NCBI GenBank assembly: GCA_038496445.1
Contig: JALMLS010000479.1
Coordinates: 124,001 to 188,000 of the forward strand
Source of the DNA: Trichosphaerium sp. ATCC 40318
Lineage: Eukaryota > Protista > Tubulinea
Direction of reading: 5' to 3'
Length of the DNA: 64,000 nucleotides
In this document: piece after piece, positions 14,994-19,565 of the stretch
Layout of the letters: every line of letters starts with the position of its first letter
Numbering within the stretch: the stretch's first letter is position 1
Notes under the pieces: generated by a model
What the model was told of the DNA's origin: nothing
Databases searched by the model: none
Seen by the model: only the letters and a program-made list of their open reading frames with translations
Translations under genes and position numbers: made by a program

Positions 14994-17900
14994 ATGACCA
15001 CAACAGATGGTTCAGTACAGTCTCGTTTGGCGCAAGAGCACTTTACTTTTGTCAAAACGTTGAAACAACACCCAAACGGGTTTACGATGCGAGAACTCCA
15101 AGAGAACCTCGGTATTAAAATAACAGAGCCGCTGCTTGAACTATTAAAAGCAAACACCCAATTGGAGTATGATGAAAATACAGGTCATATCAAATACAAG
15201 CACAAGTACCGCATTGGTTGTAGCGACGATATAATGCAAATTTTGAAGCGAGAAAGGATAATGCAAGTGGACGAAGAAACAACTACGGCGTACCCGCAAA
15301 TCAAATCTATCTTATACGTAAGTTTGGTTTTTGCTGTCTGGCTGTTACGATAATGACGACTTTTCAGCGACTTTTCACCACTTTCTCTGGGAAATTTTTG
15401 GATGGTTTTTCCAACCTTTTTTTTCTTTTCACGTGTTGCATGTTATAATTAACGTGTTGTAGAATCTTCGCAATGAGCTTAAAGTACTCAACGTCGAGCA
15501 CAGTGTCAATAAGAATTTGGTACGAGCGACAAAGCGGTAATTGCAGTAAACTAACTAAACCTGATTAGATGGTATACTTGAGACCCTCTTTGAATCACGT
15601 AAACCCACCTATTGACCTTGAGACTCTACCAAAGAAAATACAAAGGCTATGGAATAACGTAGCCAAGGTAGATTTCGTAGACCTGAAACAGATATTATTG
15701 TACGCCAAGCAACAATGTGTTTTGCGTTTTGAGGTAACATAGCAACTAGAGACAACGACCGTCCGCTTTCAAAACTGGACTGCAATGTGCAACCAGATAT
15801 GTTTCAGGATGGAAAACAGAGGCGAAAGAAAGAGAAGCGCGATCAATCTGATGCCGACGCTGACTTGCAAGCGCTTGCAGCTATTCTTCGGTAGGTTGTT
15901 TCTACTTTTTAAACTAAGCAATCTTCAGAGGGGGACTTCAAAGCCAAGGTGGTGAAGAGTATGTTTTTAAGTTCGATACAGCATTCGATTTCTTGCCATC
16001 TTCAAAGGAGGAATCTGGAAAAAAGCTAAAGCGGGCCATACTGCACAATGGCGAAGCGAATCCAACTGAATTTGAAAAAATAGTGGATCTGATTGCAATC
16101 GTTGCCACGTGGTTTTATAGTCACGATAGCTTTGTCTTAACCCTTTACAAGTTTGTAGAGAAGAAATTGTACGCATACAATATTGTCAAACACGTGACTG
16201 CGTTGTTGGTATCATGTATTGACAAGATCTAATGTTATCTAATAGATTCTTCGAAAAAGATTTATGCACTGAATTACAGCTGCCAGCAAAGCAAGTCAAC
16301 AAAGCTTTATCTATCCTCGGTGGCCATAAGCTGATAACGAGGTAATTTAATATATTGAACTATTATGCAAACTTAATCTGTAAATAGACACGTGGTAGAA
16401 CCCAAAAAGAGGTCTTCTAGCAAGTATGCTAGGATGACTAATGTATGGACAATTGACTTGGACAAATTTGTGGATGCTGTACATTATCGTGTCCTTACTA
16501 TGGAGAAAGACCTCGTAGATGAAATTGAAAAGATGAAAGACGAAGTGCTTGTTTGTAGGCCATGTAAAAAAACATACAAGACGCTGCAAGTTGAAAGTGT
16601 CAAAAACAGAGCAACTGGAAAGTACCATTGTGATGTGATTGGATGCGATATTGAGTTGACCAGAACTAACAATCGCGCCTTGCTTCAAGAAAAAGAGTCA
16701 TTGCTAAAGGAGCTAAGAAGGGTAATGCAACCCCTCAAGGATAGAATAGATGACTTACTAAACCTCGATAAAAGAGGTAAGTACTAGATAACTGTTTCGA
16801 AACAAAAACTGAAAACGCCTTTAGGTAGGAATCCTAACCATAGATGCAACTTTCGCAAATCTGTGTCAACCTCCACACGCCGAGAAACTCGCTCAAGAAG
16901 ACGACGTTTGATTAAAAAGCCACCTGTAAAGCCTACCGGATCAACAAATAATCCTGAAAGCAAGGAGGAGGTATTTGTGCTTTTTGCCTTGGTTTAGGGT
17001 TGACATTTGTTTAGCCGAAAGCTGACATCGTTGAGTACTTTCAATGCCACCCTTTGCAGTATAGAGCAGTACAACCATTAATGACAGAGATATTGTTGCC
17101 TATAGTAAAACAACCACATGTCCTAAAACGTGAACATGGATTTGTGTTGGCTAAAGAGTTGCTTGACAACATAGCTCAATTCAAAAAAATCATAGAAGCA
17201 CGCTTCTACTTATACGAAATAACACCATTGTCCCTCTTTCTTGCGTACTCAAGAGGTATCACGATAATACACTCCAGCTGCCAGCTTCGTGTTCTTATTT
17301 TTTCTAGGATACAATGCCAAGGAGATTGTCAGATTAATAACTGAGCTGGGACAAAATGTAATACCAGATGACTTGCATAGACTTATAAGGAATTATACTT
17401 CAAATGCATACTACAAGATTGTACTTGTGTTGAGGTACGACTATCTAGTTTCGTTGCTACATATGCTTATTGTTTTGATTCAATAGGAACAACAAGTACT
17501 TCGTACAAACACCAAACGAAGACTTGTGTGATGCAGTAAAGGGTATAAAAGAGCTGAATGACTACTGTGCAAATTCAGTTATTTGTAAATATTATGGACC
17601 TGGTAACTGTTTTGATAAAAACCTAGTGTTCTTACCTTTGTGTACTTAGACAAGAAGGTGTGTTTCGGTTTCGAAATCGAACCTGAGCAGGCAGAGAATG
17701 TCAAGCGTATCTGTTATAAACATGGGTTTCCTATAATCGAAGAATTTCAAGTGGGTAGCTATACAGAGGCATCATCTATAAGGTAGCAAAACTAATCACT
17801 TACAACAACTCTAAACTTAATAAATATTTAGGATCAATATTCGTCCTGAGATCAAGTTGCGAGATTACCAACTCCACAGCAGCCACAGTCTTTTTTGGAA

Positions 17901-19565
17901 TGGTTACAAGATGCACTCAGGCATACTTGTGTTACCCTGTGGCGCTGGAAAGACACTGGTTGGTATCAACGCTGTTGCTATGTGCAAGGTACTCATCGAT
18001 GTTTGACAAAGTTTCTTACATGTATTTGTGTTTAGCTGAATGCAATTGTATTCTGTCAGTCTGCTCTTGCAGTAACACAGTGGAAAGAACAATTTAAGAA
18101 GTTCACCGATGTGCAAGACAAACAAATATCTCGGTTCGTATCCCTTCATAGGAGAGAGTGGAACGCGAAGTACGGTCATTACAAAAGCCATAAAAGTAAT
18201 CCAGATTAGTGCCGACATCGTTGTGACAACATACAGCATGTTCTCTTCTGAAAAAGGAAGGAAGCAAGATTCTCTTAGCACCATGAGGCAGTGTAAAGAT
18301 AGGGTATGGGGTATCATGATATTAGATGAAGTGCATCTCGCAACAGCAACAGTTTTTAGGCATGTTTTTTTTAATGTCAATTTGTGTATTGACTTACACG
18401 TACACCTATAGAAAAGTTACCAATCAAATTAAGAGTCACGTGAAAGTCGGATTAACCGCAACAATGGTTCGTGAGGACAATCTGATCCCTGAATTACCAT
18501 ACCTTGTTGGTCCAACGCTCTATGAGCTCGATATCTTCACGCTTCAGTACGACTTACCAGTTGTTATTATACTACTAACACGAACCTCCTTAGAATGCGT
18601 GGTCACATCGCGCCCGTACGTTGCCATGAGATTCACGTGCCAATGGCACAGAAATTCAAAGAAAGACATCAAATGTACTATCTATCTCTTTGGTTTTTAC
18701 TTACACTACGCTATTGCTCACTAAATCTACCTAGCTCTGATTATATGGAAGAACGACGATTGTTGTACATGTGTAATCCAAACAAGACACGCATTCTGTA
18801 TGAGCTAGTAATGAAGCATGCTATGGCAGGAAGCAAAGTCATCATTTTCTGTGATTCCATCTTCAGTTTGACATGGTATTCTCATCTCCTCAGTACGCTA
18901 ACCTCGAAAACAAACTCTCCACACTTGCTTCATAGCACTAACAACCATCGAAATATAGACTGGGACATGGTCCATGGAGATACAGCCCTAGCAGATCGTG
19001 CACATGTGTTGTCCAAGTTTAGAAGAGAAGGTCACAATAGCATCAACCGTATCCTCCTCAGTTCAGTAGGAGATCAGTCTATCGATCTCCCAAGTGCCGA
19101 CGTTGTTATTCAGCTTGGTTGTGGAGATGGGTCACGCATGCAAGAAGGACAACGGATAGGACGTGTTCAAAGACCTTACAAAAACAAAACAGAAGCTCAC
19201 TTTTACTCCCTTGTATCATCGGATACAGAGGAAGTCAAATACGCTGCCAAGCGTCGAAGCTTCTTGGAAGATCATGGATATGTTGTTAACGTTCAAGCGA
19301 ATGGTTCTTCGTACTTTACAGCTCGCACCAAGCAATACGTTGAGCTCAGGCATCAAGAGACGCTGACTGACGCCATTCGAAAGGAGCTTACTAGACGAAG
19401 AAAAGAGAAGGATAAGGTACCAAACCTCGGATCACAAGTCAGACGATCAGTCGCTCACCATTTTCCTAGCCTAAATCCCGCAATAACTTTCATAATGTAC
19501 GTGCAAAACGTAAGCAGACCACGCCCAGACAAGGCATGTTAAAGAAACTGAAAATGAGAAAATAA
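14994..19565 (+). CDS. putative TFIIE-beta / TFIIE-alpha / XPB(ERCC3-like) triple fusion protein, ~1,170 aa, 20 exons
   Basis: TFIIE-beta-like tandem winged helices (LLELLKANTQLEYD..HIKYKHKYRI; IQRLWNNV; basic tail). TFIIE-alpha-like WH plus Zn ribbon (KDLCTELQLPAKQVNKAL; WTIDLDKFVDAVHYRV; CRPC..CDVIGC). XPB NTD and helicase motifs (LRDYQ, LPCGAGKT, DEVH, GLTATMVRED, NPNK, SRMQEGQRIGRVQR). Intron phases checked by hand across both domain junctions. Confidence 0.75.

What the first reader, a model, noticed from the sequence alone, without database searches (positions are those of the whole stretch)
16388..17014. TFIIE-alpha moiety stops after the Zn ribbon and helix; the TFIIH-binding acidic tail is replaced by a tether to XPB
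Seen: after CRPC...CDVIGC and the ..MQPLKDRIDDLL helix comes an R/K-rich linker (RRETRSRRRRLIKKPP), then directly the XPB NTD. The second Zn knuckle is CxxxxC rather than CxxC. Established: the acidic C-terminal region of TFIIE-alpha binds the p62/Tfb1 PH domain of TFIIH. Inference: the covalent link may substitute for that recruitment contact, a mechanistic rationale arguing that the fusion is selected rather than accidental.
Basis: partly seen in the sequence, partly recalled or inferred. Interest (0 to 1): 0.7.

Follow-up and report, generated by a model that had tools for sequence, protein, structure and literature searches.

The report
Truncated TFIIE-alpha tethered to XPB
In this amoeba, one gene appears to join the core of the transcription-start factor TFIIE to the DNA-opening motor XPB through a floppy linker that stands where TFIIE's usual TFIIH-binding tail would be; at least five other amoeba genera share the layout, and I found no paper describing it.

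Summary
Window 16388-17014 holds exon 7 (16388-16776), a 48-nt intron, exon 8 (16825-16970) and a 44-nt intron. Exon 7 encodes the end of the TFIIE-alpha winged helix, a four-cysteine Zn ribbon (CRPC...CDVIGC) and a long helix. Exon 8 encodes a 56-residue linker of net charge +12. Exon 9 then starts the XPB N-terminal domain.

The stretch belongs to a 20-exon gene (14994-19565) encoding TFIIE-beta, TFIIE-alpha and XPB in one frame. The join is not a gene-model artefact:
- The same layout occurs in transcripts of five Tubulinea amoebae (Vermamoeba, Rhizamoeba, Amoeba, Arcella, Nolandella).
- It also occurs as uninterrupted genomic ORFs on two environmental contigs.

In all 25 proteins compared, TFIIE-alpha stops at the equivalent of human residue about 193. 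The whole TFIIH-contacting C-terminal half is absent, not only the acidic tail. The linker is 38-261 residues, unconserved and predicted disordered. Its basic character and the CX4C knuckle are lineage-specific.

The reading that the tether replaces recruitment through p62 is plausible but untested. I obtained no RNA evidence for this locus. I could not check whether p62 is present or whether a second, ordinary XPB exists.

The scan noted the same kind of gene on another piece of this genome. I found no paper describing the fusion.

The parts
14994..15890 (+). Exons 1-4 (14994-15317, 15463-15519, 15569-15733, 15808-15890): TFIIE-beta moiety. It gives context for the finding. It joins the alpha part through a 38-nt intron (15891-15928). 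If that intron is kept, an in-frame TAG follows at 15892.
   Evidence: Pfam TFIIE_beta at E=2.3e-8 on exon 1. The model aligns end to end with full-length relatives across this junction.
15929..16341 (+). Exons 5-6 (15929-16168, 16246-16341): N-terminal part of the TFIIE-alpha extended winged helix. Exon 5 has no in-frame ATG.
   Evidence: Profile A1, which includes these exons, hits GTF2E1 residues 12-193 at E=3e-29.
16388..16776 (+). Exon 7: end of the winged helix, the long helix, the Zn ribbon and the first linker helix of TFIIE-alpha. This is the last TFIIE-alpha sequence in the gene.
   Evidence: AlphaFold mean pLDDT 89. The top 16 Foldseek PDB matches are Tfa1/GTF2E1 chains. Alignment A4.
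16554..16646 (+). Zn ribbon. Cysteine codons lie at 16554, 16563 (CRPC) and 16629, 16644 (CDVIGC, a CX4C knuckle).
   Evidence: All four Cys are invariant in 24 family sequences. Second-knuckle spacing is CX2C in 17, CX3C in 5 and CX4C in 2. pLDDT is about 95.
16674..16772 (+). Helix after the Zn ribbon (NNRALLQEKESLLKELRRVMQPLKDRIDDLLNLDK). It is the equivalent of human GTF2E1 residues about 165-193.
   Evidence: AlphaFold helix at residues 96-128 of exon 7, pLDDT 94-98. HMM alignment to GTF2E1.
16777..16824 (+). 48-nt GT-AG intron. If it is retained, an in-frame TAG follows at 16785-16787 and the product ends ...LDKRGKY without XPB.
16825..16970 (+). Exon 8: most of the 56-residue linker (protein residues 449-504). 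It has 18 K/R and 6 D/E, net charge +12.
   Evidence: Only one frame is open, and only this exon keeps exons 7 and 9 in frame. Composition. The equivalent linker in the Rhizamoeba protein has pLDDT below 50.
16878..16919 (+). Basic cluster RRETRSRRRRLIKK. It looks like a nuclear import signal, which is an inference.
   Evidence: Comparable clusters, at least 4 K/R in 7 residues, occur in 10 of 23 family linkers and at the N-termini of ordinary XPBs.
16971..17014 (+). 44-nt GT-AG intron between the linker exon and the first XPB exon.
17015..17782 (+). Exons 9-12 (17015-17255, 17308-17434, 17487-17602, 17650-17782): XPB N-terminal domain. It starts at the motif YFQCHPLQY, which aligns with the DYSxLxLKxDHxxRPLW motif of ordinary XPBs.
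   Evidence: Profile A2 hits human XPB from residue about 93 and yeast Ssl2 from residue 152, E=2e-21. MAFFT alignment with ordinary XPBs.
17832..19565 (+). Exons 13-20: XPB helicase lobes and a basic C-terminal tail. Exon coordinates are 17832-17988, 18036-18169, 18210-18359, 18412-18546, 18594-18674, 18735-18892, 18959-19416 and 19470-19565. The motifs GAGKT, DEVH, TATMVRED and QEGQRIGRVQR are present. The stop is TAA at 19563.
   Evidence: Pfam ERCC3_RAD25_C at E=7.9e-46. Alignments. The intron 18360-18411 is GC-AG.

Best explanation
The stretch encodes the junction of a natural single-chain TFIIE-XPB protein.

Shown:
- The TFIIE-alpha part is cut down to its RNA-polymerase-binding core: the extended winged helix, a C4 Zn ribbon and the first linker helix, equal to human residues about 12-193.
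- This core is joined in frame to the start of the XPB N-terminal domain through a 56-residue, basic, low-complexity linker.
- The linker is predicted disordered in a relative.
- TFIIE-beta lies upstream in the same frame.
- The layout is conserved across Tubulinea amoebae.

Inferred:
- The covalent tether keeps TFIIE and the XPB translocase together one to one.
- That would make the non-covalent contacts of the missing TFIIE-alpha C-terminal half dispensable. These are the acidic domain and E-dock with the p62 PH domain, the E-floater with p62 BSD1, and the E-bridge with p62 BSD2 and XPB lobe 2.
- The core would still sit on the polymerase clamp and stalk while XPB works on downstream DNA.
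- The linker most likely descends from XPB's own basic-then-acidic N-terminal extension and probably carries the nuclear import signal.
For: Gene model: 19 introns of 38-145 nt, 18 GT-AG and 1 GC-AG, keep one frame of 1161 codons.

Colinearity: single BLAST alignments run from the beta part to the XPB C-terminus against full-length relatives.

The fusion is on one mRNA or ORF elsewhere:
- Trinity transcripts of Vermamoeba, Rhizamoeba, Amoeba proteus, Arcella and Nolandella.
- Uninterrupted genomic ORFs of 1193 and 1170 codons on L001 and L002.
- Pfam finds TFIIE_alpha together with XPB families in relatives.

Extent of the alpha part: profile A1 matches GTF2E1 residues 12-193 of 439 and Tfa1 residues 9-191 of 482. 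No relative shows any TFIIE-alpha C-terminal family.

Fold: AlphaFold and Foldseek on the window's exon 7, and on the Rhizamoeba alpha-linker-XPB segment, give TFIIE-alpha and XPB chains. The linker has pLDDT below 50 and pTM is 0.46.

One clade: the fused XPB parts group with SH-aLRT 100.

Known contacts of the missing half: PMC5980561, PMC7111264, PMC2275666.
Against: - I have no RNA evidence for this locus. No RNA run was listed, and the protein collection holds no ORF of the same species.
- The joins at 16777-16824 and 16971-17014 rest on splice signals, frame and homology.
- The linker is not conserved, so nothing in it argues for a specific function.
- Several relatives keep an acidic and aromatic patch before the XPB domain that could still bind p62.
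- I do not know whether p62 and the other TFIIH core subunits exist in this genome, or whether a separate TFIIE or XPB does.
- I did not measure the distance between the end of the TFIIE-alpha helix and the XPB N-terminus in initiation-complex structures. A 38-56 residue linker reaches at most about 135-200 A fully stretched, and about 45-55 A on average. That is my own estimate.
Confidence: 0.6

Rival explanations
1. The fused gene is an extra copy. These amoebae would also keep ordinary separate TFIIE and XPB genes, and the single-chain protein would serve a special task, such as a subset of promoters or only transcription while another XPB serves DNA repair. It might even work outside the TFIIH core.
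For: The fused XPB parts form a long-stemmed clade apart from all ordinary XPBs sampled. That pattern fits either an old duplicate or fast evolution after fusion. From my own knowledge, not checked in a paper here, trypanosomes are reported to keep two XPB copies with divided roles. An XPB permanently tied to TFIIE would be odd in excision repair.
Against: No second XPB from any of the five named amoebae appeared among the listed hits, although those lists are cut off and cannot prove absence. The N-terminal domain that pairs with p52 in ordinary TFIIH is retained and modelled with high confidence. All helicase motifs are intact.
Confidence: 0.25
2. The tether has no special role. After a head-to-tail fusion of neighbouring genes, the TFIIE-alpha C-terminal half decayed. 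What remains between the domains is XPB's own N-terminal extension, with its import signal and acidic patch. TFIIH would still be contacted through p62 by other acidic segments.
For: Ordinary XPBs begin with a basic stretch (MPPKRK-like), followed by an acidic stretch and then the conserved motif. The fused proteins' linkers show the same order of features. Linker length and charge vary widely. Relatives carry patches such as EEAAEEDEFNLDDFEDF just before the XPB domain.
Against: In this window's protein the acidic patch is weak (ESKEEPKADIVEY). Every one of the 25 proteins compared has lost all known TFIIH-contacting elements of TFIIE-alpha, which suggests the covalent link made them unnecessary. 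The two views are partly compatible.
Confidence: 0.3
3. Regulated intron retention yields two products: a stand-alone single-chain TFIIE ending ...LDKRGKY when intron 16777-16824 is kept, and the fused protein when it is spliced.
For: An in-frame TAG lies three codons into the intron.
Against: Relatives with uninterrupted ORFs have no intron at this place, so this cannot be a family feature. Stops early in short introns are expected by chance in DNA of 39% G+C. There are no RNA data.
Confidence: 0.1
4. The fusion is a gene-model artefact, and two or three adjacent genes were joined by mistake.
For: No RNA data exist for this locus. The 38-48 nt introns are short.
Against: - The alpha exon 5 has no in-frame ATG.
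- The gaps between the modules are 38, 48 and 44 nt, too short for a promoter and untranslated regions.
- The same fusion occurs in transcripts of five genera and as unbroken genomic ORFs.
- Relatives align across every junction.
Confidence: 0.03

Closest known systems
Ordinary TFIIE-alpha (human GTF2E1, yeast Tfa1) in the RNA polymerase II pre-initiation complex
   Same: It has the extended winged helix, the four-cysteine Zn ribbon and the following helix. The profile E-values are 3e-29 and 4e-21, and Foldseek TM-scores normalised to the target reach 0.79. It also partners with TFIIE-beta.
   Different: It ends at the equivalent of human residue about 193 of 439. It lacks the E-dock, E-bridge, E-floater and the acidic domain that binds the p62 PH domain. 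It is covalently joined to TFIIE-beta upstream and to XPB downstream. In this sequence the second Zn knuckle is CX4C.
Ordinary XPB/ERCC3/Ssl2, the translocase of TFIIH
   Same: The N-terminal domain, both helicase lobes and all motifs are present. Pfam gives ERCC3_RAD25_C at E=7.9e-46, and the PDB profile gives E=2e-21.
   Different: Its N-terminus is not free but continues from TFIIE-alpha. The fused XPBs form their own long-branched clade and are about 36-38% identical to ordinary XPBs.
Trypanosome TFIIH with the stably bound subunits TSP1 and TSP2, thought to be TFIIE
   Same: TFIIE-like proteins are permanently associated with TFIIH and interact with XPB (PMC5829719).
   Different: In trypanosomes the association is non-covalent and the proteins are separate genes. 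Here the link is a peptide bond.
Archaeal TFE-alpha
   Same: It has the same short layout of a winged helix plus a Zn ribbon with no long C-terminal half. The family profile also hits archaeal TFE, at E=1.5e-8.
   Different: The amoeba sequence is much closer to eukaryotic TFIIE-alpha. Archaeal TFE is not fused to a translocase.

Membership tests
TFIIE-alpha (GTF2E1/Tfa1) | N-terminal extended winged-helix domain | tested here: met
   Profile A1, which includes window exons 5-7, matches GTF2E1 residues 12-193 at E=3e-29 and Tfa1 residues 9-191 at E=4e-21. On single exons of the window, Pfam TFIIE_alpha reaches only E=0.04, but it is significant in relatives, down to 1.5e-12.
TFIIE-alpha (GTF2E1/Tfa1) | C4 Zn ribbon after the winged helix | tested here: met
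   Four Cys are invariant in 24 sequences. The AlphaFold model of window exon 7 has pLDDT about 95 over the ribbon, and its top 16 PDB matches are TFIIE-alpha chains. The second-knuckle spacing is CX4C here.
TFIIE-alpha (GTF2E1/Tfa1) | C-terminal half with the TFIIH-binding elements, including the acidic domain that binds the p62 PH domain | tested here: not met
   The match to solved TFIIE-alpha chains ends at human residue 193 and yeast residue 191. A 56-residue basic linker follows, then XPB. No relative shows a C-terminal TFIIE-alpha family.
TFIIE-alpha (GTF2E1/Tfa1) | Partnership with TFIIE-beta | tested here: met
   TFIIE_beta at E=2.3e-8 on exon 1 of the same frame. TFA2_Winged_2 is found in the relative P0011. 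The partnership is covalent here rather than a heterodimer.
XPB/ERCC3/Ssl2 | XPB-type N-terminal domain | tested here: met
   Profile A2 matches human XPB and yeast Ssl2 at E=2e-21 to 2e-19. Foldseek on the relative's model finds XPB chains.
XPB/ERCC3/Ssl2 | SF2 helicase lobes with motifs I-VI, the RED motif and the ERCC3/RAD25 C-terminal region | tested here: met
   GAGKT, DEVH, TATMVRED and QEGQRIGRVQR can be read in the translation. Pfam gives ERCC3_RAD25_C at E=7.9e-46 and Helicase_C at E=2.5e-13.
XPB/ERCC3/Ssl2 | Subunit of the TFIIH core, bound to p52 and p8 | not testable with these tools
   Only this 64-kb window of the genome can be read, and I had no query for p52, p8 or p62.
Archaeal TFE-alpha | Closest sequence relatives are archaeal TFE | tested here: not met
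   Archaeal TFE chains score E=1.5e-8 and weaker, against 3e-29 for human TFIIE-alpha.

The most novel reading that the evidence does not exclude
In Tubulinea amoebae the single-chain TFIIE-beta/TFIIE-alpha/XPB protein would be the only TFIIE and the only XPB. Recruitment of the promoter-opening motor would then have been hard-wired by a peptide tether. The whole TFIIH-binding half of TFIIE-alpha, and perhaps recruitment through the p62 PH domain, would have become dispensable. That would be a natural minimal promoter-opening module, and it would also carry TFIIE into DNA repair complexes.
Probability: 0.35. Interest if true: 0.8.

Novelty: new variant of a known kind. Interest (0 to 1): 0.65.

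Why it matters
TFIIE recruits TFIIH and stimulates XPB through several weak contacts whose individual importance is still debated. A lineage that replaced all of them with one covalent tether is a natural experiment.

It says which parts of TFIIE-alpha are needed once proximity is guaranteed: the polymerase-binding core. It gives a ready-made single-chain construct for structural and single-molecule work on promoter opening.

It also raises testable questions:
- How does TFIIE leave at promoter escape if it is tied to XPB?
- How does excision repair cope with an XPB that carries TFIIE?

As a fusion of proteins known to touch each other, it supports the TFIIE-XPB contact seen in cryo-EM structures from an independent direction.

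Tried and rejected

2. A word search with exon 7 for ORFs of the same species found nothing. This genome therefore seems to be absent from the protein collection.

3. Scan notes on TFIIH subunits in this genome. 'TFIIH' and 'Tubulinea' occur in no note, and a look-up by sequence was blank.

4. Intron models that I corrected:
   - My first intron at 18876-18935 was wrong. Alignment with relatives shows 18893-18958.
   - Between exons 14 and 15, the 40-nt intron 18170-18209 fits relatives better than a 67-nt alternative.
   - The intron 18360-18411 works only as GC-AG.

5. Whether the unfused XPB P0012 has TFIIE just upstream on its contig. The upstream ORF shows no likeness to the alpha profile (hhalign probability 0.1%).

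6. Whether short Trinity isoforms (P0009, P0281, P0284, P0287) show a stand-alone XPB or TFIIE. They are fragments that start or end inside domains, so they are not evidence.

7. Papers. Four searches that combined TFIIE with XPB or ERCC3 and fusion, with Amoebozoa, or with TFIIH and Acanthamoeba found no description of the fusion. The 'gene fusion' hit in PMC13024598 concerns MYB.

8. The careful tree search did not finish in the time allowed. The quick IQ-TREE result is the one reported. Three rows (P0161, P0154, P0026) dropped out because my Walker-A anchor did not match them.
Full report
**What is in the sequence**

The window is eukaryotic DNA of about 39-41% G+C around the finding, with short GT-AG introns. 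By hand and by translation I built a 20-exon model on the + strand from the ATG at 14994 to the TAA at 19563-19565. It encodes 1161 residues. Its 19 introns measure 38-145 nt. Eighteen are GT-AG and one, 18360-18411, is GC-AG.

The finding covers four features:
- exon 7, 16388-16776
- a 48-nt intron, 16777-16824
- exon 8, 16825-16970
- a 44-nt intron, 16971-17014

Exon 7 encodes the end of a winged helix, a long helix, CRPC...(21 residues)...CDVIGC, and the helix NNRALLQEKESLLKELRRVMQPLKDRIDDLLNLDK. Exon 8 encodes a basic, proline- and serine-rich stretch containing RRETRSRRRRLIKKPP. Exon 9 begins the XPB N-terminal domain.

Only one frame of exon 8 is open. Leaving the exon out, or using the neighbouring AG as acceptor, runs into a stop. 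The two introns leave no room for a hidden exon that could encode an acidic tail.

**Is the join real?**

I could get no RNA evidence for this locus. No RNA run was listed, and a word search with exon 7 found no ORF of the same species. The evidence is therefore comparative, and it is strong.

A full HMMER scan with the last large XPB exon put long proteins of 996-1341 residues at the top, each with XPB at the C-terminal end. Pfam finds TFIIE_alpha together with the XPB families in them, and TFIIE-beta's second winged helix in one.

Cluster look-ups name Trinity transcripts from five amoebae, all of which I take to be Tubulinea:
- Vermamoeba vermiformis
- Rhizamoeba saxonica
- Amoeba proteus
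- Arcella intermedia
- Nolandella sp.

Two environmental genomic contigs carry the alpha-linker-XPB arrangement as unbroken ORFs of 1193 and 1170 codons (L001 and L002). No splicing assumption is needed there.

The window's model aligns from the beta part to the XPB C-terminus in single BLAST alignments with full-length relatives, at 34-41% identity to the named Tubulinea proteins. Those alignments also support the 38-nt intron at the beta-alpha junction and the 40-nt intron 18170-18209. They corrected one of my introns to 18893-18958.

The alpha exon 5 has no in-frame ATG. The gaps between the modules are 38, 48 and 44 nt, too short for separate promoters. I rate the artefact reading at about 3%.

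**How much of TFIIE-alpha is there?**

A profile of the alpha segment from 18 relatives plus the window's three exons matches human GTF2E1 residues 12-193 (of 439) at E=3e-29. It matches yeast Tfa1 residues 9-191 (of 482) at E=4e-21, and archaeal TFE only at E=1.5e-8 or weaker.

An AlphaFold model of the window's own exon 7 has mean pLDDT 89, about 95 over the Zn ribbon, and a helix at residues 96-128. Its top 16 PDB matches are all Tfa1/GTF2E1 chains from pre-initiation complexes.

The four cysteines are invariant in 24 family sequences. The second knuckle is CX2C in 17, CX3C in 5 and CX4C in 2, namely this window and P0013. The CX4C spacing is real, but it is a lineage quirk inside a confidently modelled ribbon.

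Everything after human residue about 193 is missing in all 25 proteins compared. According to the reviews and the paper I read, that missing half holds:
- the E-dock, which binds the p62/Tfb1 PH domain in yeast and BSD2 in human
- the E-bridge, which binds p62 BSD2 and XPB lobe 2
- the E-floater, which binds p62 BSD1
- the acidic domain, which binds the p62 PH domain

The sources are PMC5980561, PMC7111264 and PMC2275666. The first linker helix is retained. In ordinary complexes the linker helices touch the MAT1/Tfb3 RING domain (PMC7111264).

**The linker**

By alignment, the segment between the alpha helix and the first conserved XPB motif is 56 residues here and 38-261 residues in the family. 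It shows no sequence conservation.

Here it has 18 K/R against 6 D/E, a net charge of +12. This is the most basic for its length among the 23 linkers compared, where net charge runs from -5 to +14. A cluster of at least 4 K/R in 7 residues occurs in 10 of the 23 linkers.

In an AlphaFold model of the Rhizamoeba alpha-linker-XPB segment, both domains have pLDDT above 90. Forty-two linker residues fall below 50, and pTM is 0.46. That is two well-folded domains with no fixed mutual position. Foldseek finds TFIIE-alpha chains for the first domain and XPB chains for the second.

**Where XPB starts**

The N-terminal-domain profile matches human XPB from residue about 93 and yeast Ssl2 from residue 152. 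A MAFFT alignment with twelve unfused XPBs places the family motif (D/E)F(N/D)xxP(I/L)xF, here EYFQCHPLQY, on the ordinary motif DYSxLxLKxDHxxRPLW. That motif opens the ordinary domain.

Ordinary XPBs carry a basic stretch before that motif, followed by an acidic stretch. The fused proteins' linkers show the same order. Several relatives keep an acidic and aromatic patch just before the motif, for example EEAAEEDEFNLDDFEDF in Rhizamoeba. In this window the patch is weak (ESKEEPKADIVEY).

I therefore think the linker descends from XPB's own N-terminal extension rather than being a new element. A residual contact with p62 cannot be excluded for the family.

**Mechanism**

The following are shown:
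- a TFIIE-alpha core, a flexible linker and a complete XPB lie in one frame
- TFIIE-beta lies upstream in the same frame
- the layout is conserved over deep divergence
- the XPB parts form one clade (SH-aLRT 100 in a quick IQ-TREE run)

The following is inferred. The tether guarantees proximity and one-to-one stoichiometry of TFIIE and the translocase, so the multivalent non-covalent contacts of the missing half became dispensable. This fits the ordinary architecture, in which the alpha chain runs from the polymerase clamp toward TFIIH anyway.

By my own estimate, a linker of 38-56 residues spans about 45-55 A on average and at most about 135-200 A. I could not measure the required distance because no tool gives coordinates.

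The closest known system is the trypanosome TFIIH. It carries the TFIIE-like proteins TSP1 and TSP2 as stable, non-covalent subunits that interact with XPB (PMC5829719).

**Open points**

- Whether this amoeba has p62 and the rest of the TFIIH core.
- Whether it has a second, ordinary XPB or TFIIE. The long stem of the fused clade fits either fast evolution after fusion or an old duplicate. My samples held no ordinary amoebozoan XPB for comparison.
- Whether retention of intron 16777-16824, which has an in-frame TAG after three codons, is used to make a stand-alone TFIIE. Relatives with no intron at that place argue against this as a family feature.

**Novelty**

Four full-text searches found no description of a TFIIE-XPB fusion. 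Notes of this scan record the same kind of gene on another piece of this genome. A follow-up there likewise found that related amoebae share the layout and found no paper (s1-390467, s1-390957).

I class it as a new variant of known kinds: a new architecture built from well-known families.

Noticed in passing
window 18360-18411: The only GC-AG intron in the gene (AG|GCATGT...CCTATAG). With it, the translation TATVFRKVTNQIKSHVKVGLTAT matches relatives residue for residue in length. No GT donor keeps the frame.
   Followed up: partly
window 15891-15928 and 18170-18209: Two very short introns of 38 and 40 nt. Both are supported by alignment with relatives. The first joins TFIIE-beta to TFIIE-alpha, and an in-frame TAG follows at 15892 if it is retained.
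   Followed up: partly
L003:3186-5435 (protein P0012, Logan run SRR22746111): An unfused 749-residue XPB nests inside the fused clade, next to P0010. It lies 141 nt downstream of a 530-residue ORF with a weak YqaJ-type match and no likeness to TFIIE. It could be a secondary split of the fusion, or a capture of the XPB part by another genome, perhaps a giant virus of amoebae.
   Followed up: partly
protein P0007 (XP_049848955.1, labelled Schistocerca gregaria, 342,834-nt contig): A full beta-alpha-XPB fusion annotated as a desert-locust protein groups with the amoeba and environmental sequences in the tree. The contig is probably from an amoeba-like organism within the locust assembly, not from the insect.
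   Followed up: no
window 16776-16787: An in-frame TAG lies three codons into the intron after exon 7. Retaining the intron would give a TFIIE-beta/alpha protein ending ...LDKRGKY without XPB.
   Followed up: no
proteins P0011, P0165, P0164 and P0013 (environmental contigs): One sub-clade has very long linkers of 136-261 residues, rich in proline, serine and threonine. The tether length is clearly not constrained to a narrow range.
   Followed up: partly
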